Source: Octopus bimaculoides (Eukaryota). Taken from it: a stretch of DNA of 64,000 nt. The stretch spans positions 6,782,542 through 6,846,541 of the forward strand of contig NC_068985.1 of assembly GCF_001194135.2 (NCBI RefSeq), read 5' to 3'. A program made the position numbers and the translations under genes. This document shows positions 9,371 to 59,190 of this stretch, piece by piece. The notes under the pieces are model-generated. The model saw only the letters and a list, made by a program, of their open reading frames with translations, had not been told where the DNA came from and made no database searches. Every line of letters starts with the position of its first letter. The first letter of the stretch is position 1.

Positions 9371-9563
9371 GGCGCAGGAGTGGGTGTGTCGTAAGTAGCT
9401 TGCTTACCAACCACATGGTCCTGGGTTCAGTCCCACTGCGTGGCAACATGAGCAAGTGTCTTCTACTATAGCCTCGGGCCGACCAAAGCCTTTTGAGTGG
9501 ATTTGGTAGACGGCAACTGAAAGAAGCCCGTCGTATATATGTATATATATATATATACACATG

Positions 9564-9602
<39 letters not shown>

Positions 9603-9827
9603 ATGTGTGTGTGTGTGTGTGTGTATGTTTGTATGTCTGTGATTGTCCTCCCAACATCGCTTGACAACAGATGCTGGCGTGTTTACGTCCCCGTAACTTA
9701 GTGGTTTGGCCAAAGAGAGCGATAGAATAAGTACTAGGCTTACAAAGAATAAGTCCTAGGGTCGATGTGCTCGACTAAAGGCGGTGCTCCAGCATGGCTC
9801 CAGTCAAATGACTGAAACGAGTAAAAG
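9371..9827 (+). mobile_element. Bipartite tRNA-derived SINE (A head + internal TA/TG microsatellite + B tail)
   Basis: A-box-like tgggtgtgtcgt at 9381 and B-box ggttcagtccc at 9424. Near-identical copies lie at 22785, 33120, 49178 and 51935. Confidence 0.85.
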
Positions 9828-13949: not shown

Positions 13950-16900
13950 NNNNNNNNNNNNNNNNNNNNNNNNNNNNNNNNNNNNNNNNNNNNNNNNNNN
14001 NNNNNNNNNNNNNNNNNNNNNNNNNNNNNNNNNNNNNNNNNNNNNNNNNNNNNNNNNNNNNNNNNNNNNNNNNNNNNNNNNNNNNNNNNNNNNNNNNNNN
14101 NNNNNNNNNNNNNNNNNNNNNNNNNNNNNNNNNNNNNNNNNNNNNNNNNNNNNNNNNNNNNNNNNNNNNNNNNNNNNNNNNNNNNNNNNNNNNNNNNNNN
14201 NNNNNNNNNNNNNNNNNNNNNNNNNNNNNNNNNNNNNNNNNNNNNNNNNNNNNNNNNNNNNNNNNNNNNNNNNNNNNNNNNNNNNNNNNNNNNNNNNNNN
14301 NNNNNNNNNNNNNNNNNNNNNNNNNNNNNNNNNNNNNNNNNNNNNNNNNNNNNNNNNNNNNNNNNNNNNNNNNNNNNNNNNNNNNNNNNNNNNNNNNNNN
14401 NNNNNNNNNNNNNNNNNNNNNNNNNNNNNNNNNNNNNNNNNNNNNNNNNNNNNNNNNNNNNNNNNNNNNNNNNNNNNNNNNNNNNNNNNNNNNNNNNNNN
14501 NNNNNNNNNNATATATATATATATATATATATATACACATGGGTGTGTGTTTGTGTGCATATATATGTGTGAATATATATGTGTGTGTGTATGTGCGTGA
14601 AAGTGTATGAATGTGTTTATGTTTATATTTATTTATGAGTGTATATGTATTATGACAGATGAAATTAGAAAGAGAGATAATATGTAATCATAAAACCATC
14701 TTCACGACTGGTGATTGAACAATTACATGAAGTCGTGAAGTCCCTACAGATATTTATTTACGTTTCATTATGTTATGTTGTTTTCTCTGTAATTAATTAG
14801 TTAAGTCTAAACATATAAGAATTATGTCTATCTCGAGATAATGACAAATGTCATGGCATTCAATTTATACTGGAAGGAGAGGTAGCATTTGAATAGATTT
14901 AATTTAATATATATCTGCATGTTAATTAAGTAAAGTAATTTAAAGTATTAATTTAACTGATTATATATTTCTAGAGATACATGATAACCATATGTGTGTG
15001 TGTGCGCGTGTGCGTGCATACATTTATATATATGTTGCGGAATGGAGTAGATAAGATATTGGTTACATATGTGTTTCAGACTGAGCAGAACCTCAGAAGT
15101 GATAGATATTTTCCGTGAAATATAAAAAGAACTTCTATCAGTTTATCGTGCATCTATACGGGAAAAATCCACAAACTTCCGTCTCAAATAAACAACTATT
15201 GTTCCCCAAAGAAATACTACAATATCTATTTCAAAACACGATTTCACATCAGTAATCTTGTAATATTCAATATATACAATATAAACATATTTATGTATAT
15301 GGATATATGCATGTGTTTATAAAAGTATGTATTTATACGATATTATAAACAACATTATCGCCTTTGTCTAAGCTGTCTTTAACTTCCTCCGTTTAGTAGA
15401 TTCGACTTTGCCTTTCATCATTTCGCTATCGATACAATAATTACCTGTTGAACACTGGGGTTGATCTAATCCACTTATCCTTCTCTCAAAATTAATGGTC
15501 TAGCAAAGACTTTTGTAGCCAATATTACAATATATGGTTACTATAATCGTTATGAGGAGAATAAAATTTCAAATGTCTCCTTGCATATTCACAGTGCCGT
15601 TAAATCTTATTAGAACGAAGTAATTCGATAAGCTTCTAAGTAGGGGCTTTTGTTGATTCCTTTGGAATGTCTCCCGTGGGGAGCTGAAAGAAGGTAAATG
15701 CTTTTCTTTTTTGAAATCATTTCTTTCATTATTCATACTTTCCTATGTGTGTTCATTGATAGTTCATCTTCAATCCTGTAACCACTTTCCGTTATTATGA
15801 CAGCCAAGCGGATAATTAATCACCCGTTGCTAGCGCAATGACCAGTCACAAAACAACCGAACTAAATATTTTAATTCATCCCGGCAGACCCGAGCAAGAT
15901 TGTCCAAATCCCATTCTATAGGGATTCTGGACACCATCGCTTTTTAGAGGTGATCGCGGTAAAAACCCATGTTTCAAGTGTATTGCGTCTCTTTAAGCAA
16001 ATCAAGATATGGATGTATAAATCTAAACAAATGTTGTGTTTTTTTTTTGTTTATTATTTTTTGTATTAACTAGAAATTGCCAAACCAATTGCTTCGAACG
16101 GTCAGCCAAAGAGAAATCACACGTCCACATTGAATGAATCCAATAGCAAATATAATTATATGTTATAGACCGGGAGTATACTGATCTTTATCGTATTTGG
16201 ACTTTGAAGTATTCTTTCTCCAGGTAGTCGTTGTGTCTTCACAAGACACTCAGTTTATTAGTAAAAGAAACCTTTGCGATACCTTGATGTTTTGACTGGG
16301 CTGTGTCTCTCAGTGCAAACCTACCACCTTATTATTGGATGTATATAAACGTATTGACATTTTTTTTATAGCAATAAGCATATCAAAAATCATTATCTGA
16401 TGGCCACTGAATCCGTCTAACCGATACAATTTATGAACATACGAAATTATGTGCGTGTAAAATTTATGTACTGAGCACAAGCAGGAAAACGATGATATAT
16501 CTATTCAGATATCAGATATCTACACTGAAGCACGTGAATCAAAAGAATATCCTATCAATATATTCCTAGTTCTTTCTCGGTATCTTGAACGTTAATATAC
16601 TGATCGCTGTTTCTCCACTTAGACGAGGTTTATGCACCGTGCATTCTATATATTGTCGCCAGGGACGGGGTGATTCGTTGCGTTACTGTGTTCTGGTATG
16701 GTCGTGTCTCTTCAGTATAAAATATGTTCCGGATAATAATTCAAACGGTGTAGTTTGAATTATTACCCGGTGTAGCTTATTGAAAAAAAAAACAGCAAGC
16801 AAGATATCTTGTGATGCGTGTTGATCATAGTCAATATCATCACTTGCCCGCAGCACAGATAGATACAACACAATCACATATATCTTCGTTCTTATTTAGG

Positions 16901-18559
16901 GACTACCAGAGCAGATCATGAATTACAAAGCTCTATTCTATTTTGCCTTAGAACATCTACTTCATGTAGACGAATTTCATTTCATAACATGTTCTATTCA
17001 TGAACGTCAAAAGACAATGGGCTACTACAGAGTTTTGCCCTGGATGTGTCAATTAATTCCAAACAATTAATTAATCTAACCAAGATTGAGGACCATGGTT
17101 CAAATAAATCAACAAACACATTATTTGTCTATGTGTGTTGAGGAGTTCCAAAAGAATGACTCATAACGTACACACAAAAACAGAGAAATTTAAACATTGA
17201 CGTACCTATCCATTCTTTATACATTTTGGTAGACCCGGACGTAATTGAAATAATTGCAGTTCTGTTGGTAAAAATCGAAGAACATCTTCACGACTTAGAC
17301 GATTGGTGTTGACAGCATTCTTGTTTAGTTGATATAAGTGGACATTGTAACAGCGAAAAGCTAAACAAAAGGACCTAATTTATAGAAAGAAGTAAGCTAT
17401 TTGCTGATATTCGTTGATGATTCACCATCCAATATCATTTTATTAGAGAAATTCAAATCGATGAAGTAATACGCTGTGGCATCCTGAACGCATATATAGT
17501 AATCGCTGTGTTCATATAGGCTTGGGGAACATTTCTCTTCCTTTTAAACAATGTTTGTTCATCGCACACTCGATACATTGACAAAAGATTAATTTGTAAT
17601 ACTGAAGTTAAACAAGATTAGTGCACCATGTAAATAGGAATTGGAAATCAAATTATTTGCTGACGTGTGCTGATGTTAGCAAAAAGGATAATGAATCATC
17701 GCTTGCATGCAGAATAGCGAGGATAAATATGACGTATTTATTCAGTCTTAAAACAATTGTACAAACCCCATCGTGTATAAACTCATCCAATTATTGTTCT
17801 TCATCCTCTTCGGCGAACATCTATCTTAAAAAGACGGAAAGAAACTTTCATTGATGTAAAGAAAGTGTTAAGTGACTGTATTGTTTTTTGGTTGGTGTGT
17901 ATTTTCCGTCAAAATTGCACCCACATTAACGGACCTAAACGTGAATACTAACATTTATTTATAGAATTTAGCACGCACATTATTTCTCAGTCCGTGCTGA
18001 AAGCTTCCATGCCCATGATTATAGCTTCGTTGCACGCAGACAGACAGAAATAAAGCTAATTATATATATCTTAATCCTTAATATCTTCTAATTGAAAAGT
18101 ACGGGTATTGCTAACAGTAGAATTATTTCGCCTTCCATGTATTCCCCGTCATTTAATCGAAGTGTACTCACATGGTACTCCAGTCATTGACTTAAGACGA
18201 CTTTGAGACGCCGAAGAAATTTGACCAAGTTGTGTCTGCTTTGTCAATGCTACCCTTTGATGATTGCAAGTATATAGAAGTAGTGATTCTTCTTTTGTAC
18301 TATATAAACCAACAATTAAATATCTGCGTGTTGAAAGATACTACATCAGTTAATAAGTTCCTAAAAACCCTGGAGAATATATACGATGTCGTACTTATTA
18401 ATCTCTTAGTACGTTTTGACGGACACGAACGTCAATTCCTTAACCATTAGCATATTTCGAAATCAGAGACATCTCCCTTTCGTCGATGTTTCTTCAGAAC
18501 ACATTTAATACATTTACCGGGATTTGTGACACTACACAATAATATTAAGTACTGTCTCG

Positions 18560-18790
18560 ATTTGCAGGAATCATATGGTAAGTTACCCGGTTTCTATGCT
18601 GTATAAGTAACTGACATCACACCTATACCTGCTGAACCGGACGCCATCTTGTCGAAGGTAATTACCTTACAGCTAAGTAGACTGGTGCAATGTGAAATAA
18701 AATGTTTTACTCAACAGCACAACGCAATGTCGGGATATGAAAACCATGATTTTGCAAACGTGAGTGCAATCACTTAATCACCAGAGCTCA
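18560..18790 (-). mobile_element. Degenerate tRNA/CORE-like SINE inserted into the tandem array
   Basis: Reverse complement has a tRNA-like head followed by gttgtgctgttgagtaaaacattttatttcacattgcaccagt. Same family as 36920-37182. It accounts for the enlarged 508-bp unit spacing. Confidence 0.55.
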
Positions 18791-19999
18791 CACCTAAACT
18801 AGAAGAATGCTCTCTCTTATGTATGAATTCAAGCACATACATTATTTGCTATTGTGCACTAACGAAATTCACGTGCAGACAGGATAATGAGAATCAAATG
18901 AATGACGTTTCTATACATTTTTAATAAGTCTTAGCAGACGCTATCGTGAGTTTCATAGTCGTTGTTCTATTTCGTTTTTCGGAGAAAATCCGTCCCTAGA
19001 AGTTTTGTATTCACATATCATTCGAATCATTTATATAAACCCACTAAAAGAGAGAAAACATTTTAGAATTCGTCGTCTTTTACTCAGATCTATACACTGG
19101 GCAAGGAATCTAACCAAGAGTTGCGGGTTTTCGTCGTACAATGTGCAACCAGTTTGCTAACGTGTATCGATGTAACTTTTCAGGTGTTGGCAAAGTATAT
19201 ATTTATTTGATCTTAATACGTTCTGGGAGATCAGAGTCTAAACGTACTAAAGACTGTTGTATTCGCATTTCGGAGAATGTCTCCCTTAAGGTGATTCTTG
19301 TTAAACACACTCCCTATTCTCAGATGTAAAAGAATTTTGAGGCACTGATGTGTTTCGACTTTGTTTTTTTTTTCTGTTAACGCTAACCCTGGATCAATGG
19401 ATCTAAAGAAGATTAATGGCTCTTGGTAATAAAATTTTGCAAACAAATTAATTGTTGGAGCGTACTGATGTCTGCCAAACCGATAATAATTCATCATGTG
19501 CGCGCAGAATAGCTGAAATCAAAGCACCGGTTTTTCTTTTCATTCTTAATGCGTTCTGGCAAACACGAACCTGAATATACTAGTCGCTATTGTAATTGGA
19601 ATTCGAAGGTTATCCACTCCTTTTAGTCGTTGTGTGTTCACATCTCTGTTCATTCACCGAACAACTGTTTGTGATGCTGAGGTTGAGATACTGTCTGTGT
19701 CTCTTCAGTCAATGCTGCCCTTGATCAATAAAGCTAAACCAATAAAATACTTTTTTTTTAAAGGAATCACTGAACACATTATATGCTAGGGTATGCAGAA
19801 TTCATCATGTTTAGGCAAAACAGCGACAAATAAATCAGTGCTATTTCTATGCATTCTCAGAGGCTTCTGGCAGTCCAGATCAACAATATATTAATCGAGG
19901 TTTTATTTGGTCCTCTACTTACTCAATTTGGTCCTCCAACTTACTCTAGAAAAGTAACATTTTTAAATCTCACAACGTGAGATATTCAGCAACCGTACT

Positions 20000-20218
20000 T
20001 TGTAGTAAAGCTTGTTTGCCAACATAACCCAGAGATCGCGATACACAGATATTGTTTTGAGCTGAGTGGGGGGTGCTAGATTCCCTTGTTCGAAGATATA
20101 AGGACACAGATCGTGTCGTATAGCCAGCCGGAGACAATGTCTTCTGGGGCTAAATTACAGCAACATTATTCCTAAACCAGGACTGCCGTGTTATGTTGGC
20201 AAACAATTTTTACTACAA
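20000..20218. mobile_element. MITE-like element with 29-bp terminal inverted repeats
   Basis: ttgtagtaaagcttgtttgccaacataac (20000-20028) vs gttatgttggcaaacaatttttactacaa (20190-20218), 2 mismatches. Possible 2-bp CT target duplication. Confidence 0.55.
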
Positions 20219-22243
20219 CTGACTCTAGGTGTGAGTTTTCAACACAGCTTTTCGTGATTAAAAGCAATTTGGGACCCATCAGTTGTTTGGAGGTTTCCGT
20301 TTTGTCAAACCTACCCCCACTTCGATGCACCAGAACATGTATAATGCTACGTCATTACACAAATCAACAAAGAAGGTACAGGGACGTGCACGCGTCTGCA
20401 ACAACTGATAATAATCCGGACGTATAGCATAACCGAGTTAATCGATAGTATGTCTATTCATCATTAACCTTTGTGGCAGTCCCAGGGAGGAATATAGCAA
20501 TCCCTGTTTTATTTGAACTTCGGAATACATCTTCATTTCGAATGGTGTGTATTCGCAAATCATTTGATTTATTGACAACGGAGTTAAAGACGACCAAAGG
20601 TTTTTAGTTGTAAAAATCAGTAAATAAAACATTCACTGGTTCCCGATGATGTTTGCCAATGCTATAATAATTCATTGCTTGCTCGAAGAACAAAGAGAAT
20701 CTGATCAATAATGCACTGATTCATTCTGGCAGGCCGAGTGTACATATATATAATGTTGTTTTATTTCGTCTTCAGAGAACATCTCCTTTAAGATGTTATG
20801 TGTGCACAGAACATTCCATTCATCGACGTAAGGTGACTTTGACAGAACATTGCTTTTCAACTTTACTGTGTTTATTGAAAGTTACACCAGGAAAGACGAA
20901 TCTAAACAAGATTAGTGGCTATATTTTAGCAATAAGCAGGAAACAGCTGAAGGGTGGTGATGTCTGTGAAACCGATACAAATTCATGATATGTAAGGAGA
21001 AGTGAGCAAATCCAGAAGATGATGTAACTATTAAATCTTTATACATCGTGGCAACCCTAATTGTGAGTATTTTGTTCACGGTTGCACTTCGTTTTCGACG
21101 AACATCTCACTTTGGAAGATGTGTGTTCACAACATAAGCAACGTACCAACGAAGAGCGAATTTGAGAAACCACGGTTAATAACACGTTTCGTCTTTCCAC
21201 TCAAAGTCACGCAAGGAACGATGAAAACAAACAGCAAACAAATTATTTTCTTAAGCATCCTGCTGTTTGCCAAACCGATAATAACAATTTAGAAGGCGCA
21301 ACAGAAAGTCAATCAAAAGAATGTTGCATCGAACCATTTATAATACATTCTAGTGGACCTGAAAGTGAATATAATAAGCGTTGTTCTATTTTCTTCGGAG
21401 ATATTTTTAACAAATGTGGGCTCACAGCACACGTGATTCATTGACATAAGGGAACTTTACAGGACTGTGGGGTTTCTACCTATATTCGTCCTCCAATTAA
21501 TATACTTCAAGAAGTATCATGGCAGTTCTTTAAGAAGACAAGGAAATAATTTAAAACATCTTTAATTACCATTTGCAATTGTCTCTGTACCGCTCTGCAT
21601 TGCACTCCATTGTACTAGAGTGGTACTTCATCAAACTTGCATCAATGTGTGCGTTCTTTGTGCAAAACAGCAAATATTACGTAAATTTTTACAAACGGCT
21701 CTTGCGTGCAATGGCGTTAAGTACAGAAATATATGAATCTAATCATGTCCTAAATTCTTTTTTTTTTTTTTTTTCGCTTATGGGAATTACATTTTACTCC
21801 TCGGNNNNNNNNNNNNNNNNNNNNNNNNNNNNNNNNNNNNNNNNNNNNNNNNNNNNNNNNNNNNNNNNNNNNNNNNNNNNNNNNNNNNNNNNNNNNNNNN
21901 NNNNNNNNNNNNNNNNNNNNNNNNNNNNNNNNNNNNNNNNNNNNNNNNNNNNNNNNNNNNNNNNNNNNNNNNNNNNNNNNNNNNNNNNNNNNNNNNNNNN
22001 NNNNNNNNNNNNNNNNNNNNNNNNNNNNNNNNNNNNNNNNNNNNNNNNNNNNNNNNNNNNNNNNNNNNNNNNNNNNNNNNNNNNNNNNNNNNNNNNNNNN
22101 NNNNNNNNNNNNNNNNNNNNNNNNNNNNNNNNNNNNNNNNNNNNNNNNNNNNNNNNNNNNNNNNNNNNNNNNNNNNNNNNNNNNNNNNNNNNNNNNNNNN
22201 NNNNNNNNNNNNNNNNNNNNNNNNNNNNNNNNNNNNNNNNNNN

Positions 22244-22308
<65 letters not shown>

Positions 22309-22784
22309 AATAATTAATTTATCATCATCAGCTAGAACTTAACTGTCAACTGGTTTTAATTCTTAGTAGACGTTGTATAGTAGCTGCATTACATCTTTTG
22401 GTTGTGATAAGGACATATATAAATGTTGTAGCTAAATTACCATCTCATGACACCCACTGCTATTCTCTTCTCCCGGTCCAAATTATAGTTGGTGTATTTT
22501 TCTCTCTAAGTTCATTCTGCTACAGTGGTAGCAACATGTAATTCTTTCATTCTCTAATTCTGGTGAAATATTTCCTATAAATTATAATGGAGTGTCTTGT
22601 ATATTGAAAACGTATAATTTGCATCCGAATGTGGTGGTATATTTGAAATTGATGTAATGCTTGCATTGTTCGATTACACGGAGCCGCCTGAAACGGCCAT
22701 AATGTATTAATACTTTCACATTCTTGTTGCTTATTTGCTTTTTATATAAATAAAGCAAAGAAGAAGTTTTAGTCGTATGTATTG

Positions 22785-23110
22785 ACACCAGTACTTACTT
22801 TTTATAAGCCTAGCACGTATTCTATCGGTCTCTTTTGCCGAACCAATAGGTCACGGGGACATAAACCCACCAGTACCGGTTGTCAGGCGGTAGTGAGGGG
22901 TTTAACAGAGACACAAAGACACATACACTTAGATAACATATACATATATATATATTTATACAACGGGACCCTTCCAGTTTCCGTCTACCAAATCCACCCA
23001 CAAGACTTTGGTTGGCCCGAAGCTGTAGTACAAGACACTTGGCCAAGGTGCCACTCAGTGGGACTGAACCTAGGAACATGTGACTGAGATGCAAGTTTCT
23101 TACCACACGG
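22785..23110 (-). mobile_element. Bipartite tRNA-derived SINE (A+B), reverse
   Basis: Reverse complement of the 9371-9827 element, including the internal TA tract. Confidence 0.8.
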
Positions 23111-24414
23111 TCAAATATAACTCCACTTTTCCATCCACCTCCCCATCCTCCTCGTCCTCCTCGCTATCATCATCAGCAGCAGCAGCATCAGATACATAAA
23201 ATGTACCACTGCCAATGATGATGCAGCCATTTTTGTTTGGCTACTGTGTACAGATTACTGGAAACTGAAAACTACACACACCCTCTTCCGTCTTTGCCAG
23301 GGCTTTGTACGAGAAATTAGGAATTTCTTGCGTATAATAACCACATAGCCGAAGCCGAAATACTGCAGTTCCTTATAGCAAATTTGATGAAATGATTCTT
23401 TACTCATAAATGAGTGCCATAAATATTGTCTAGATTTTGATGCGGAATATCTTCACGACTTGATACTGACACATGTATAATTTTCTCAAATTATCAGTGT
23501 TAAACCTATCTTAGGCGATAGATAGCAATCTTGCAAGAGTGAGAAACAGTTGAGCTGAATTTGCCTGATGTTTCTAATGATAGAAATTAATACAGGATCC
23601 ATAATCTTAAATATTGTAAGTTATATATATATACAAATCAATGCCATGAAAGAGAAGCAATCGATATGAAAATCAAATGTATGCGTATTACATAAGTCCT
23701 TTATAAGAGAATATAATACTCACTAAAATGCAACGAACGTAACAATTTTCTAATATGACATATTTAGATAGATCACTAATATAAGATATCGCTAAGTATT
23801 CATTAAATAACCCGGAGAAACTGAAACAAATCAGGTTCCGGAGGAAATAAGATAGCGCTAAAATTCGTCAAGTCTATATGAAATATGATAGACAGGAGTA
23901 AATTATTTTACATAATTTGAAGCAATGCTACAGCATCGTTGCATTATGAATAATGTTTATTGCCGGAACGATGTTAAAACTGCTGGTGATATCCACGTAT
24001 TACAAGAGATTACACTTCATGGATTGTTAGCAATACTAAAGATAAGTTCGGATCCACTTAGAAGTGTGTCATTATAAGAGCTGCCGATTCTATGCAAAAA
24101 GAAATGAAAATCAAGATCTCTGGATTCATAGAAATAAATTGCAAGTTCTATTCACAGTGAAATATCCAGCAGCCACACAATGATTGGGAATCTGTGTTTG
24201 ACAGAGTAATTACAAGGATAATGTCGCTTAAAATATGGGTCGATAGGAGCCACTGATGCTCCTAACCGCTAGAAGGTCTCTAATCAAAATGCATTTTGGT
24301 TTAAACCATGCGAAGTCTTAAAATTCGGCATTTTCTATATCGATCGCTATATCTACCGATATTTATATCTATAAATACATATAGCTATCTGTATCTATTT
24401 CTAATATTCTCTTT

Positions 24415-24565
24415 TTCCTTGTCTTGTTTAAGTCATTTGACTGCAACCAAGCTGGAGCACCGCCTTCAGTCGAACAAATCGACCCCAGGACTTACCTAGT
24501 ACTTATTCTATCGTTCTCATTTGCCGAACCGACATCAGTTGTCAAGTGACAGTGGTGGAACAAAG
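24415..24565 (-). mobile_element. SINE B module, reverse, internally deleted
   Basis: agtcatttgactgcaaccaagctggagcaccgccttcagtcgaacaaatcgaccccaggactta is the reverse complement of the B tail. Confidence 0.75.
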
Positions 24566-24789: not shown

Positions 24790-24992
24790 TGTTTGAGTGT
24801 CTGTGTTTGTACCCCCAACATCGCTTGACAACCGACGCTAGTTTGTTTAGGTCCCCGTAACTTAGCGGTTCCGCAAAAGAGACAAATAGAAGAAGTACTA
24901 GGCCTACAAAGAACAAGTCCTGGGGTCAATTTGCTCGACTAAAGGCGGTGCTCCAGCATGGCCACACTCAAATGTCTGAAACAAGTAAAAGA
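24790..24992 (+). mobile_element. SINE B module
   Basis: ccaacatcgcttgacaaccgacgctag...ggcggtgctccagcatggcc...gaaacaagtaaaagag. Confidence 0.8.
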
Positions 24993-25984: not shown

Positions 25985-26180
25985 ATGTTTGTGTCTCCAA
26001 CATCGCTTGACAACCGATGCTGGTGTGTTTAGGTCCCCGTAACATTAGCGGTTCACCAAAAGAGACCGATAGAATAAGTACTGGGCTTACACAGAATAAG
26101 TCCTGGGATCGATTTGCCCGACTAAAGGCGGTGCTCCAGCATGGCCGTAGTCAAATGCCTGAAACAAGTAAAAGAGAGAG
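25985..26180 (+). mobile_element. SINE B module
   Basis: Near-identical to 24790-24992 and 49335-49545. Confidence 0.8.
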
Positions 26181-27549
26181 GATATATATATGTGTGTGTG
26201 TGTGCGTGTATTTATCATGTATGTATGTATGTATGTATGTATGTATGTATTTATGCATGCATGTATGTATGTATGTATGTATGTATGTATTTATGCATGC
26301 ATGTATGTATGTATGTATGTATGTATGTATGTAGATATACATACTGAGAGAGAGGATGGGAAGGAGATAGATCCCTAGATAGATAGATACCAACATACAC
26401 ACACACGCATACACACACATGTATATATATGTAGACATATACGTATATTTATATTAACATATATCTCTATTTTGTGCATACGTTTACGTAAATATACACA
26501 TACATGTGTGTATCTGTGTATATACAACAATCCCACGGAAGAATGAAGATGGTACGGTTTAATAATTTTATTCCTTATTACGATGTCGTCCAATGGCTAC
26601 AATATTTTATTCCGTCAGTTAACTCATTGCTTTATACAAACCGTGCTCCGTAGAGACGAAACCGTTCCTCCAGCAGTTCGAAACGATCCTTGCCCTGAAA
26701 AAAATTTGTGAAGGAACGCCATTTTCACCTTTTCCTCTCCTGACTTTTATAATCTGTGCTAAATGTAACAAATTGATGTTGGAATCTCCTAGGATTTAAA
26801 ATTTGCAGGGAATGTTCTCGGGATTTAACCCATACGGACTGCCATTTTCTTCCTTTAACGTTCTGTTAGCCAGATTTTGCGCATGGATTGTTGACTGAGT
26901 TATTCGCCTGGATTCCTTTGTAAATGTGAAAGAATGAAAATATTGATGTTTGCAATACTTCCGATCATGTTCTTGCATAGTCGAACGTGAAAGTGACAAT
27001 TTCCTGTGAGTTATCCCACTGGAGAATGGCATACTACTGTTCCTACTAAATACATGTAAACAACACACTTTTTCCAAAAGACATGAATCAATTCCAAAAC
27101 ATAGCTTTTAAGCTTACTTTTCAGTGTCCTCCAATGCAATGTTCTGAACTGAAGAGACATGTTCACATTTCTATGTGCAAAATGTCATTAAAATAAATGC
27201 ACAAATATGTCTACTGATTCTCACTGTTTTGTGCAATTGGAATATTTTAATCGCAACCTGGCAAGACACTACAGACATCTCTCGGAATTTCTTTGCATGA
27301 TTGAAGCCTACAAAGTCCAAAAGCCGGGGGATGCCTATTGCTGAAGATTAAATCGAATTAGCGTGTCTAGTAGTCCACTTGTATCCGTTGAAGGAAGTGT
27401 TTGGCATAAGCATACGACTTATACCTAGAAATCGTCCCCCGATATGACACCAATCAGAGAAGAGCCATCTTTGCATCCGAGTGTGCAGAAATATTATTAT
27501 AATGAAGGTACGCATCAGTGTCTCGATTCTCGTTGATATTTTTGTCGAT

Positions 27550-27564
27550 AATAATATTAATAAC

Positions 27565-27639
<75 letters not shown>

Positions 27640-27733
27640 AAGAAGAAGAAGAAGAAGAAGAAGAAGAAGAAGAAGAAGAAGAAGAAGAGCAAAAACAACA
27701 ACAACAACAAAAACAACAACAATAACAACAATG
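27550..27733. repeat. Compound trinucleotide microsatellite (AAT)n(AAG)n(AAC)n
   Basis: Direct inspection. It produces the poly-N/K/L/I ORF artefacts. Confidence 0.95.
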
Positions 27734-31874: not shown

Positions 31875-32095
31875 AATGGAGGGGGCCAATCGATTAGATC
31901 GACGCCATTACGCAACTGGTATTTAATTTATGATTAGATCGACTCAAGTACGCAACTGGTACTTAATTTATCGACCCACGAAAATAAGAAAGGCAAAGTC
32001 GACATCGGTGGAATTTGAACTCAAAACGTATCAACGGACGAAATGCCGCTAAGCATTTCGCCCAGCGTTCTAACGACCCTGCCAGCTCGCCACTT
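31875..32095 (-). mobile_element. Family-C SINE, reverse, with internal 40-bp tandem duplication
   Basis: gattagatcgac...cgcaactggta.ttaatttat is repeated at 31892 and 31932. The head gagctggcag...cgaaatgcttagcggc is on the minus strand. Confidence 0.8.
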
Positions 32096-33724: not shown

Positions 33725-34060
33725 TTATAAGCGGTGTTGAAAATGTCGTCCTTCATTTTCGATACATAAGTTGACTCTTCTACACATGTTTCGAAATATA
33801 TCTTGGAGATTCTGACGCAGTATGGACCATGTGAAGGTTATGATTGCGTCTCTTAGCTCATTCATGGTTTTCGGGCGATTCTTGTACACGGATCCTTTAC
33901 TGGCTCCAGAGAAAAAAAAGTCTGGTAGTGTTAAATCAGGTGATCTTGGTGGACAAAGTCCCTTCAAAATAATCCGTTCACCGAAATATTCACTGCGGGG
34001 AGACTTTTTCAACAGCCTGTATCTATTTCTTCATGTCACATTACCAAACATAACATGACA
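33725..34060 (-). mobile_element. Tc1/mariner transposase C-terminal fragment
   Basis: GLCPPRSPDLTLPDFFFSG...VYKNRPKTMNELRDAI...RRVNLCIENEGRHFQHRL matches WPPRSPDL.P.DFFLWG...CI...G.HF.HLL. Confidence 0.85.
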
Positions 34061-36919: not shown

Positions 36920-37178
36920 AACGACGTACGATGGATCGACACATAGATGATTTGTTTATAGTGATCAAATGTTTGTGTACACGTAAGCTCATTCCCTCCC
37001 TCAAATCGACATTACCTGTACAGGTGCAACGAGGGCCACATATAAGATGACGAAATGATCGTAAAGCAACGTGAATTGAAGTGCTTTGCTCAAAAACACA
37101 ACGCAACGCCCGGGCTGGGAATAGAACCCACGATCTCGCAATCTTAAGTGCAACACCTTAACCACTAAGCTATGCGCC

Positions 37179-44694: not shown

Positions 44695-45075
44695 TTTTCT
44701 ACTCTAGGCACAAAGCTCGAAGTTTAGTGGGAGGTGACCAGTCGATTGAATCGACCCCAGTACGCAACTGGTACTTAATTTATCGCCCCCGAAAGGATGA
44801 AATGCAAAGTCGACTTCGGTGGTATCTGAACTCAACGTAAAGACAGCAATATATATATATATATTTTTTTACTAAAGACACAAGGCACGAAACTTTTGGG
44901 GAGGGAACCAGTCGATTAGAGCGACATCAATACGCAATTGGTACTTCATTTATTGCCCCTGAAAGGATGAAAGGCAAAGTCGACCACGGCGGAATTTGAA
45001 CTCAGAACGTAAAAACGGACGAAATACCGCTAAGCATTTCGCCCGGCTACCGCTTCTGCCAGCTCACTGCCTTGA
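44695..45075 (-). mobile_element. Two adjacent family-C SINEs, reverse
   Basis: Copies at ~44695-44845 (5'-truncated) and ~44870-45075 (near full), separated by (TA)n. Confidence 0.8.
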
Positions 45076-49178: not shown

Positions 49179-49545
49179 GGCGCTTGCTTACCAGCCCCAT
49201 GGTTCCGGGTTCAGTCCTACTGCGTGCCAACTTGGCCAAGTTTCTTCTACTATAGCCACGGGCCGACCAGAACCTTGTGAGTGGATGTAGTAGACGTAAA
49301 CTGAAAGAAACTCGTCGTATATATGTGTATGTCTGTGTGTCTGCGTTTGTCCCCCTAGCATTGCTTGATAACCGATGCTGGTGTGTTTATGCACCCGTCA
49401 CCTAGCGGTGCGGCAAAAAGGACCAATAGAATAAGTACTAAGCTTACAAAGAATAAGTCCTGGGGTCGATTTGCTTGACTAAAGGCGATGCTCCAGCATG
49501 GCTGCAGTCAAATGACTGAAACAAGTAAAAGTAAAATAGAGAGAG
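49178..49545 (+). mobile_element. Bipartite tRNA-derived SINE (A+B)
   Basis: Same structure as 9371-9827; head partly deleted. Confidence 0.85.
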
Positions 49546-51477: not shown

Positions 51478-51680
51478 CCCATAACCTGGCAGAAACGTGA
51501 GCACGCTTAGCGAAATGCTTATTCGTGTTTCGTCTGTCTTTACATTCTGAGTTCAAATTCCACACAGGTCGATTTTACCTTTCATCTTTTAGAGGTCGAT
51601 AAATGAAGTTCCAGTTGTGTACTGGGGTCGATCTAATCTCCCAAAATTTCGGGCCTTGTGCCTGGTGTAGAAAAGAATAT
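51478..51680 (+). mobile_element. Family-C SINE
   Basis: ctggcagaaacgtgagcacg..agcgaaatgctta...ctgagttcaaattcc...ggggtcgatctaatc...gggccttgtgcc...agaaaagaat. Confidence 0.8.
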
Positions 51681-51934: not shown

Positions 51935-52352
51935 TAGGTGTAGGAGTGGCTGTGAGGTAAGTAGCTTGCCTACCAACCACATGGTCCCGGGTTCAGTCTC
52001 ACTGCGTGGCACCTTGAGCAAGTGTCTTCTACTATACCCTCGGGCCGACCAAAGCCTTGCGAATGGATCTGTTAGACGGAATCTGAAAGAATCCGTCGTA
52101 TATATGTATGTATGTATGGATGTATGTATGTGTGTGTGAATATGTTTGTGTGTCTGTGTTTGTCCCCCAACATCGCTTCACAACAGATGCTGGTGTGTTT
52201 ACGTCCCGAAAACTAGCGGTTCGGCAAAAGAGACCGATAGAATAAGTACTAAGCTTACAAAGAATAAGTCCTGGGGTCGACTTGCTTTACTAAAGGCGGT
52301 GCTCCAGCATGGCCACAGTCAAATGACTGAAACCAATAAAAGAATAAAAGAA
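51935..52352 (+). mobile_element. Bipartite tRNA-derived SINE (A+B), well preserved
   Basis: A box tggctgtgaggt, B box ggttcagtctc, core, microsatellite, B tail. Confidence 0.85.
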
Positions 52353-52464
52353 TGAGGTCGAGAATACGTAAATGAATTATTATTTTTATTGAAATGCGGC
52401 AGAGGTGAAACCTCTTGACGCAAGAATTCTAATAACAGTACTCATAATCTTTCATTTACAATAA

Positions 52465-52605
52465 TGGCTTCAAATGTTGGCACAAAGCCAGCAATATCAG
52501 GGGAAGGTATAAATCGATTACATCGATCACAGTGTTCAACTGGTACTTATTTTGTCGACCCGAAATAATGAAAGGCAAAGTCAACTTCAACAGAATTTGA
52601 ACTCG
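52465..52605 (-). mobile_element. Family-C SINE fragment, reverse
   Basis: aactggtacttattttgtcgacccgaaataatgaaaggcaaagtcaac...gaatttgaactc. Confidence 0.7.
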
Positions 52606-58994: not shown

Positions 58995-59190
58995 GAAGAC
59001 GGCGCGCTGGCAGGATGGTTGCACACCACGTGAAATACTTAGCGGCATTTCGTCCGTCAACAAGTTCAACTTCACCGAGATCGATATTGCCTTTCATCCT
59101 TTCGGAGTTGAAAAACTAAATACCAGTTGAAAACTGAGGTCGATTTAATCGATTTACCTCCTCACCCGAAACTGCTGGCCTTGTGCAAAA
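58995..59190 (+). mobile_element. Family-C SINE
   Basis: ggcgcgctggcagga...gaaatacttagcggcatttcgtccgtc...gcctttcatcctttcggag...gaggtcgatttaatcgat. Confidence 0.8.

What the first reader, a model, noticed from the sequence alone, without database searches (positions are those of the whole stretch)
16070..21800. Cryptic ancient tandem array of ~310-bp units spanning ~5.7 kb
The region looks unique but is built of repeating units with blocks in a fixed order. Block D (taaacaagattagtg-like) is at 17074, 17609, 19108, 19401 and 20901. Block B (tgatgtctgccaaaccgataataattcat) is at 17671, 19466, 20647, 20958 and 21261. Block A (gttgttctatttcgtcttcggagaacatctccctt..gtgtgttcaca) is at 16936, 17794, 18122, 18453, 18961, 19255, 19585, 20505, 20755, 21081 and 21380. 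Block C (cattcatcgacgtaagg.gactttga) is at ~17850, 18185, 19320, 20820 and 21435. A-to-A spacings include 328, 331, 508 (SINE inserted), 294, 330, 250, 326 and 299 bp. Units are far more diverged than a homogenised satellite, and the array has been invaded by a SINE and a MITE, so it is old. The patchy conservation could reflect past or present constraint: a relic repeat-protein gene, an exon array, a small-RNA cluster or a homotypic enhancer cluster (TGCCAA occurs repeatedly). The array appears to run into the gap at 21805.
Basis: seen in the sequence. Interest (0 to 1): 0.7.

Follow-up and report, generated by a model that had tools for sequence, protein, structure and literature searches.

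The report
Decayed fossil tandem repeat array
The region really is an old head-to-tail array of about 18 copies of a ~320-bp non-coding unit, and every test run here says it is decaying like neutral DNA, so it is an ordinary fossil satellite-type repeat and not a hidden gene, RNA or enhancer cluster.

Summary
A profile built from 5 units recovers at least 10 further units (E 1e-8 to 1e-20). All lie on the + strand, head-to-tail and in register. Nothing matches elsewhere in the window or in a shuffled copy. The array spans about 15,797-21,552, with 17 clear units plus 1-2 weak ones. Median spacing is about 323 bp. A ~211-bp SINE-like insert and a 218-bp TIR-bearing insert interrupt it. It stops about 250 bp before the gap.

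The suggested functions are not supported:
- There is no ORF, no 3-base periodicity, and stops occur in all six frames of the consensus. Pfam, Rfam and tRNA scans find nothing.
- No base pairs are conserved on either strand, and TGCCAA is not enriched.
- Units are about 54% identical to each other whatever their distance apart.
- The substitution bias predicts an equilibrium GC of 0.345, against 0.349 for the window.
- A neutral simulation with indels reproduces the apparent "patchy" conservation.
- The founder unit was rich in dyads (fold z = -3.7), but these dyads decay at exactly the neutral rate.

Best reading: a satellite-type array amplified once, no longer homogenised and left to decay (about 0.36-0.40 substitutions per site). 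No outside sequence could be found, and the organism is unverified.

The parts
15797..16193 (+). Left edge: two weak, degenerate, in-register units (profile cols 209-314 at 15797-15898; cols 93-189 at 15971-16089)
   Evidence: nhmmer E 0.016 / 5e-4 on the whole window, 4e-4 / 1.4e-5 on a small target
16194..16591 (+). Unit U02 (cols 1-283 plus 248-313; carries extra inserted sequence)
   Evidence: E 1e-40; held-out hit of the seed profile at E 5e-14
16592..16938 (+). Unit U03. Contains a local 18-nt hairpin at 16729-16770, which gives a sub-threshold Rfam rox1 hit.
16939..17264 (+). Unit U04
   Evidence: E 3e-50; held-out at E 4e-20
17265..17512 (+). Unit U05, degenerate. Only cols 11-85 are recognised (17275-17352). 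The rest is not an excisable insertion.
17513..17799 (+). Unit U06 (internal deletions)
   Evidence: E 2e-42; held-out at E 8e-15
17800..18123 (+). Unit U07
18124..18452 (+). Unit U08
18453..18967 (+). Unit U09, split by an insertion
18537..18747 (-). SINE-like insertion of ~211 bp inside U09 (boundaries +-15-30 bp). The stretch 18687-18781 is 71% identical to 37066-37165. The minus orientation is read by eye from tRNA-like box motifs and was not tested.
   Evidence: Excision restores a full-length unit, 130.6 against 81.6 bits. Intra-window BLAST.
18968..19259 (+). Unit U10
19260..19592 (+). Unit U11, the unit closest to the consensus (74%)
19593..19899 (+). Unit U12
   Evidence: held-out at E 9e-19
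19900..20509 (+). Unit U13. It is split by the TIR element and carries a 21-bp x2 local duplication at 19905-19946.
20000..20218 (.). MITE-like insertion: 29-nt terminal inverted repeats (93%) with 161 nt between them. No other copy in the window.
   Evidence: the repeat finder I1. The best empty-site junction falls exactly at the TIR ends. No other copy.
20510..20761 (+). Unit U14 with an internal deletion of cols ~69-135
20762..21084 (+). Unit U15
21085..21386 (+). Unit U16
21387..21552 (+). Unit U17, the last recognisable unit, truncated at profile col 194
21553..21804 (.). Non-array tail before the 439-N gap. It contains a T17 run at 21758-21774, possibly the poly(A) tail of a minus-strand retroposon running into the gap (inference).
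   Evidence: No profile match. Sequence read.

Best explanation
This is a fossil satellite-type tandem array. I infer that a ~320-bp, non-coding, dyad-rich unit was amplified to about 18 head-to-tail copies, probably by unequal exchange or replication slippage. Homogenisation then stopped. Each copy has since drifted independently under the genome's background AT-biased mutation. The copies have picked up about 0.36-0.40 substitutions per site, many small indels and two small mobile-element insertions. The array shows no detectable sequence-level function today.

Shown: the tandem architecture, the divergence, the neutral-like substitution pattern, the absence of coding, RNA and motif signals, and the two insertions.

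Inferred: the amplification mechanism, and an age of roughly 100-110 My. That age holds only if the source is an octopus evolving at dS = 0.0036 per site per My.
For: - Architecture: 17 clear units plus 1-2 weak ones, all + strand and in register. Held-out units score E 1e-8 to 1e-20, and there are no hits elsewhere or in the shuffled window.
- Divergence: mean pairwise identity is 54% (random expectation 27%) and 63-76% to the consensus. Identity does not depend on lag 1-9, so there is no higher-order repeat and no recent homogenisation.
- Substitution spectrum: GC->AT is 0.314 per site and AT->GC 0.166 per site. The implied equilibrium GC is 0.345, against a window GC of 0.349.
- Conservation along the unit matches a neutral simulation with indels run through the same pipeline.
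- No coding signal: no ORF of 90 aa or more in the array, stops in all six consensus frames, no period-3 signal, no Pfam hit.
- No RNA signal: no Rfam hit at gathering score, no tRNA, and 0 conserved pairs on either strand.
- The ancestral dyads (consensus fold z = -3.72) remain paired in 62.9% of cells against 61.8+-1.4% under neutrality. Compensatory changes are 3.7% against 4.5+-0.6%.
- The insertions are confirmed by empty-site scoring.
Against: - Per-column conservation variance is slightly above the neutral simulation (0.0266 against 0.0232+-0.0014, about +2.4 sd). The spread of pairwise identities is also wider than a perfect star (sd 0.044 against 0.030+-0.004). Mild rate heterogeneity or staggered unit ages would explain both, but weak constraint is not formally excluded.
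- The array has no dispersed-repeat coverage by intra-window BLAST, against a 9% median elsewhere. However, 12% of equally sized windows are just as clean.
- No orthologous or paralogous sequence could be obtained. Cross-species conservation, transcription and chromatin state are therefore all untested.
Confidence: 0.75

Rival explanations
1. The array is the decayed internal tandem-repeat region of a large mobile element. Helitron/Helentron-type elements, for example, carry satellite-like arrays in bivalve molluscs. On this reading the array arrived or grew as part of an element and did not arise in place.
For: - The review PMC10048060 reports that short satellite arrays in the oyster C. gigas lie mainly within Helitron-superfamily elements.
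- The founder unit is rich in dyads.
- The array has sharp ends, at ~15.8 kb and 21,552.
Against: - No terminal inverted or long direct repeats flank the array; flank-versus-flank BLAST gives only microsatellite matches.
- At least 17 units is more than the fewer than 10 monomers typical of element-borne arrays.
- There is no second copy of the unit anywhere in the 64 kb.
- No element ORF or Pfam domain lies nearby.
Confidence: 0.12
2. The array is a functional non-coding repeat locus: a homotypic enhancer or insulator cluster, a repeat-bearing lncRNA, a piRNA-producing cluster, or a macrosatellite-like chromatin organiser. It would be retained for its repeated architecture and not for exact sequence.
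For: - The array kept its unit length and register through ~0.4 substitutions per site, with only two or three insertions.
- Column variance shows slight over-dispersion.
- The array is free of dispersed repeats by intra-window BLAST (not significant).
Against: - No motif or block is conserved beyond the neutral expectation.
- There are no conserved or compensated base pairs.
- The substitution bias equals the background equilibrium.
- Units carry deletions of up to 67 columns and truncations.
Confidence: 0.07
3. The array is a relic of tandemly duplicated genes or exons, either a repeat-protein gene or a small-RNA gene cluster such as 5S or snRNA, that are now all pseudogenes.
For: Tandem gene clusters with units of a few hundred bp do exist. 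A unit of ~320 bp would fit a domain of about 106 residues.
Against: - The consensus has several stops per unit in all six frames.
- Column conservation shows no period-3 signal (power at period 3 is below the median).
- Pfam's best hit has E = 0.16.
- Rfam's only hit at E<=1 is a sub-threshold rox1 match on a local hairpin in one unit.
- ARAGORN finds no tRNA.
Confidence: 0.03

Closest known systems
Euchromatic short satellite-DNA arrays (satDNA-like tandem repeats outside heterochromatin), as reviewed in PMC10048060
   Same: Head-to-tail non-coding monomers of a few hundred bp form a short array of a few kb among unique and dispersed-repeat DNA. The review notes that homogenisation is less efficient in short, isolated arrays, and this array shows none.
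   Different: Described satellites are usually recognised because their monomers are similar, and they occur at many loci. Here the monomers are only ~54% alike, TRF cannot see them, and only one locus is known. Genome-wide copy number could not be tested.
Helitron/Helentron-associated tandem repeats of bivalve molluscs (e.g. in Crassostrea gigas; cited in PMC10048060)
   Same: They are found in molluscs, they are tandem repeats of a few hundred bp in euchromatin, and their units are dyad-rich.
   Different: Those arrays are typically shorter than 10 monomers, lie inside identifiable elements and are dispersed. This array has at least 17 units, no detectable element termini and no second copy in 64 kb.
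Very old molluscan satellite families (e.g. the 'extraordinarily old' bivalve satellite of Plohl et al. 2010, listed in PMC10048060)
   Same: Tandem-repeat sequences persist over very long times in molluscs.
   Different: Those families persist as recognisable, homogenised satellites shared across species. This is a single locus whose copies have decayed independently. That paper was not read here; only its citation was seen.
Functional macrosatellite or repeat-bearing regulatory loci (e.g. mammalian DXZ4 or FIRRE-type repeats; recalled from general knowledge, not tested here)
   Same: A kb-scale array of units a few hundred bp long in non-coding DNA.
   Different: Those repeats keep protein-binding motifs in each unit. 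Here no motif is retained above the neutral expectation.

Membership tests
Satellite-type tandem repeat array | Head-to-tail copies of one unit on one strand, in register | tested here: met
   17 clear units plus 1-2 weak ones, all + strand, with consecutive profile coordinates
Satellite-type tandem repeat array | Roughly constant unit length | tested here: met
   Start-to-start spacing is 248-398 bp after removing the two insertions, with a median of ~323 bp
Satellite-type tandem repeat array | Non-coding units | tested here: met
   No ORF of 90 aa or more; stops in all frames of the consensus; no period-3 signal; no Pfam hit
Satellite-type tandem repeat array | Concerted evolution: monomers homogenised, with neighbours more alike than distant copies | tested here: not met
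   Mean identity is 54% at lags 1-9 alike (0.52-0.55). The array is therefore a fossil, not an active satellite.
Satellite-type tandem repeat array | High genomic copy number or multiple arrays | not testable with these tools
   No other copy in the 64-kb window. No cephalopod or other eukaryote genome is searchable here. Two metagenome scans found 0.
Mobile-element-borne tandem array (Helitron/Helentron, TIR or LTR element) | Array bounded by element termini (TIRs, LTRs or Helitron ends) | tested here: not met
   Flank-versus-flank BLAST gives only microsatellite matches. Helitron-type ends are too short to judge at this divergence.
Mobile-element-borne tandem array (Helitron/Helentron, TIR or LTR element) | Dispersed copies sharing the same flanks | not testable with these tools
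   None in the window. The whole genome is not available.
Structured small-RNA gene cluster | Match to a known RNA family, or a conserved and compensated secondary structure | tested here: not met
   Rfam has 0 hits at gathering score, and one sub-threshold rox1 hit (28 against 58 bits). No tRNA. RNAalifold finds 0 pairs on both strands. Dyad retention is 62.9% against 61.8% under neutrality.
Coding repeat or exon array | Open frame through the unit, period-3 conservation, and a protein-family match | tested here: not met
Homotypic transcription-factor site cluster | Motif over-represented and retained in most units | tested here: not met
   TGCCAA occurs 32 times against 28.7+-5.3 expected in the window, and is in register in only 4 of ~17 units. 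No block is conserved above the neutral simulation.

The most novel reading that the evidence does not exclude
The array is kept for its repeated architecture, as a chromatin or boundary element or as a repeat-bearing non-coding transcript or piRNA source. Its sequence is free to drift while unit number and spacing are held. This would make it an invertebrate counterpart of functional macrosatellites, retained for ~100 My.
Probability: 0.05. Interest if true: 0.6.

Novelty: new member of a known kind. Interest (0 to 1): 0.15.

Why it matters
The main value is methodological and for annotation. Standard repeat pipelines rely on TRF, including the octopus annotation pipeline described in PMC13282606, and they would miss this 5.7 kb entirely and label it unique DNA. 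Profile-based scanning shows it is repeat-derived.

If the rate calibration applies, the array's divergence (JC ~0.36-0.40) is about twice that of the older known octopus transposon wave (JC 0.2). It could then serve as a deep neutral-rate and mutation-spectrum yardstick. It could also date the two elements inserted into it. Nothing here suggests new biology.

Tried and rejected
- TRF finds no ~320-bp period because the units are too diverged.
- Exact-protein look-ups of 4 window ORFs, two of them in the array, found none on record. No outside assemblies could be reached this way.
- One homology search with the mariner-like ORF at 33,725-34,012(-) was run to identify the organism and found no homologue. 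Pfam on 10 window ORFs found nothing.
- Two metagenome scans for block B and for the consensus of block A found 0 matches.
- Literature searches found no cephalopod satellite of this kind.
- A sub-repeat inside the unit was rejected (p = 0.2).
- A higher-order repeat was rejected because identity shows no lag effect. The 1,180-bp offset peak is simply in-register matching between U11 and U14.
- A first, indel-free simulation suggested excess rate heterogeneity. This largely vanished once indels and realignment were modelled.
- The segment 17,353-17,521 was tested as an insertion and rejected, because excising it does not improve the score.
- The rox1 hit at 16,721-16,778 was rejected as chance. 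It scores 28 bits against a gathering score of 58, and it lies on a local 18-nt hairpin in one unit only.
Full report
**Context.** The window looks like a draft eukaryotic scaffold. It has 17 N-gaps, many (TG)n/(AT)n microsatellites and a GC content of ~0.35. The organism could not be verified. Four exact-protein look-ups found nothing. One homology search found nothing, and Pfam on ten ORFs found nothing.

- TRF reports no ~310-bp period, as expected for copies less than 70% alike.
- A 7-mer offset histogram of 15,500-21,804 has a peak at 300-330 bp, z 4-5.4 against shuffles.
- The repeat finder returns multi-copy families with spacings of 303-333 bp.
- The decisive test was a profile HMM built from only five units. 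It recovered held-out units at E = 5e-14, 4e-20, 8e-15, 9e-19, 5e-9 and 2e-11. All are on the + strand with consecutive profile coordinates. Nothing else in the 64 kb matched, and the best hit in a block-shuffled window was E = 0.22.

**Map of the array.** After four iterations the profile has 317 match columns and gives the full map.
- There are 17 clear units between 16,194 and 21,552, plus two weak in-register remnants back to ~15,797.
- Median start-to-start spacing is ~323 bp.
'C', 'D' and 'B' correspond to columns ~55-80, ~141-155 and ~205-235.
- The last unit stops at column 194 (21,552). Neither 21,553-21,804 nor the sequence after the gap matches the profile, so the claim that the array runs into the gap is not confirmed.

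**Interruptions.**
- Excising 18,537-18,747 (~211 bp) turns two partial hits into one full-length unit, 130.6 against 81.6 bits. Part of this insert is 71% identical to 37,066-37,165, which fits a dispersed SINE-like element.
- Excising 20,001-20,218 gives the best junction for U13 (120.5 against 116.3 bits, a small gain), and the cut coincides exactly with the ends of a 29-nt, 93% terminal inverted repeat. This is a MITE-like element with no other copy in the window.
- The segment 17,353-17,521 is not an excisable insertion.
- No TIR or LTR flanks the whole array.

**Relationships among units.** Mean pairwise identity is 54% (range 41-66%; random expectation 27%). Identity to the consensus is 63-76%. 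Identity is the same at lags 1 to 9 (0.52-0.55). There is therefore no higher-order repeat and no neighbour homogenisation. The spread of pairwise identities is somewhat wider than a perfect star (sd 0.044 against 0.030+-0.004), because some units are more decayed than others: U03, U07 and U13 are the most diverged and U11 the least. Jukes-Cantor distance is 0.72 between units, or ~0.36-0.40 per lineage.

**Age.** PMC13282606 cites dS = 0.0036 per site per My for O. bimaculoides. At that rate the amplification would be ~100-110 My old. That is about twice the distance (JC 0.2) of the older octopus transposon wave cited there. This holds only if the source is an octopus evolving at that rate, and I could not verify that.

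**Is anything constrained?**
1. Coding. There is no ORF of 90 aa or more in the array. The consensus has several stops per unit in all six frames. Column conservation has no period-3 component. Pfam finds nothing in translations covering all six frames; the best hit has E = 0.16.
2. RNA. Rfam has 0 hits at gathering score across the window. In the region it gives only a sub-threshold rox1 hit (28 against 58 bits) on a local hairpin in one unit. There is no tRNA. RNAalifold predicts 0 conserved pairs on either strand.
3. Dyads. The consensus unit folds much better than shuffles (MFE -79.8 against -61.4+-4.9 kcal/mol, z = -3.72), so the founder unit was dyad-rich. In the present units those pairs survive in 62.9% of cells, against 61.8+-1.4% under neutral simulation (p = 0.22). 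Compensatory double changes are 3.7% against 4.5+-0.6%. The dyads are decaying neutrally.
4. Motifs. TGCCAA occurs 32 times in the window against 28.7+-5.3 expected. It is in register in only 4 of ~17 units, and two further copies are simply the MITE's terminal repeats.
5. Patchiness. Windowed conservation ranges from 0.51 to 0.81, with a permutation p of 0.066. An indel-free simulation suggested over-dispersion. When substitution plus empirically sized indels were simulated and pushed through the same MAFFT, hmmbuild and hmmalign pipeline as the real units, the real data became indistinguishable from neutral. Windowed variance was 0.0025 against 0.0028+-0.0008. Lag-1 autocorrelation was 0.025 against 0.029+-0.062. 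The fraction of columns at least 90% conserved was 0.118 against 0.101+-0.016. Only raw column variance stayed mildly high, at +2.4 sd.
6. Mutation spectrum. GC->AT is 0.314 per GC site and AT->GC 0.166 per AT site. This gives an equilibrium GC of 0.345, essentially the window's 0.349. That is the signature of sequence relaxing to the background composition.
7. Dispersed repeats. The array has no dispersed-repeat coverage by intra-window BLAST, against a 9% median. However, 12% of equal-sized windows are equally clean, so this is not significant.

**Interpretation.** A ~320-bp, dyad-rich, non-coding unit was amplified into about 18 tandem copies. I infer unequal exchange or slippage as the mechanism. 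The array then ceased to be homogenised, which fits what the satellite review says about short isolated arrays (PMC10048060). It has since decayed under background mutation, gaining indels and two small mobile-element insertions.

The main alternative about origin is that it is the internal array of an old mobile element, as in Helitron-borne arrays of oysters. It cannot be excluded without the genome, but it lacks termini and dispersed copies, and the array has more units than is typical. A present function that depends on architecture and not on sequence is not excluded. It has no positive support.

**What could not be done.** No eukaryotic genome, Dfam/Repbase library, or expression or chromatin data are reachable with these tools. 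Two metagenome scans were empty, and literature searches found no matching cephalopod satellite. Genome-wide copy number, orthology and transcription therefore remain open.

**Verdict.** The 'ancient tandem array invaded by a SINE and a MITE' reading is supported. The 'constraint or function' readings are not supported. The array is a new member of a known kind and of low interest, apart from its use as a deep neutral yardstick and as an example of repeat-derived DNA that TRF-based annotation misses.

Noticed in passing
window 22768-23108; also 9386-9779, 49183-49470, 51952-52278, 24797-24943, 26004-26106 (and the adjoining piece 24406-24531 with copies at 52217-52353, 49406-49542, 9703-9821, 26049-26168): A dispersed ~330-bp SINE-like family is present at six or more places in both orientations, at 69-81% identity. 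Copies often sit next to microsatellites or assembly gaps.
   Followed up: partly
window 15402-15485; copies at 52503-52582, 59081-59163, 44740-44813, 51569-51638, 31932-32002: A second short (~80-bp) dispersed repeat lies just upstream of the array. The copy at 31892-31971 lies in a 40-bp x2 tandem duplication reported by TRF.
   Followed up: partly
window 16729-16770: A near-perfect 18-nt hairpin with a 6-nt loop (94% complementary) lies inside unit U03 and is absent from the other units. It produces a sub-threshold Rfam rox1 hit (28 bits, gathering score 58). It is probably a local inverted duplication.
   Followed up: partly
window 33725-34012 (-): A 95-aa ORF looks by eye like the C-terminus of a mariner/Tc1-type transposase (PRSPDL...PDFF...HFQH). 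Pfam gave no hit and the protein search found no homologue, so this stays unverified.
   Followed up: yes
window 21758-21804: A T17 run is followed by 30 bases that run into the 439-N gap. It may be the poly(A) end of a minus-strand retroposon that truncates or follows the array.
   Followed up: no
window gaps at 13950, 21805, 24609, 30829, 40033, 41071, 45365, 49633, 53697, 57465: Most N-gaps are bordered on one or both sides by (AT)n/(TG)n microsatellites. This suggests that the assembly broke at simple repeats and that the gap sizes are estimates.
   Followed up: no
window 27548-27731: A compound trinucleotide microsatellite, (ATA)21(AAG)26(CAA)14. The middle block is 100% pure.
   Followed up: no
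consensus of the unit (profile cols 5-35, 37-53, 176-200, 201-246): The reconstructed founder unit contains several short dyads, and its predicted fold is 3.7 sd more stable than shuffles. The dyads are not maintained in the present copies. Why the founder was dyad-rich is unexplained; it may reflect a mobile-element origin or a substrate for slippage.
   Followed up: yes
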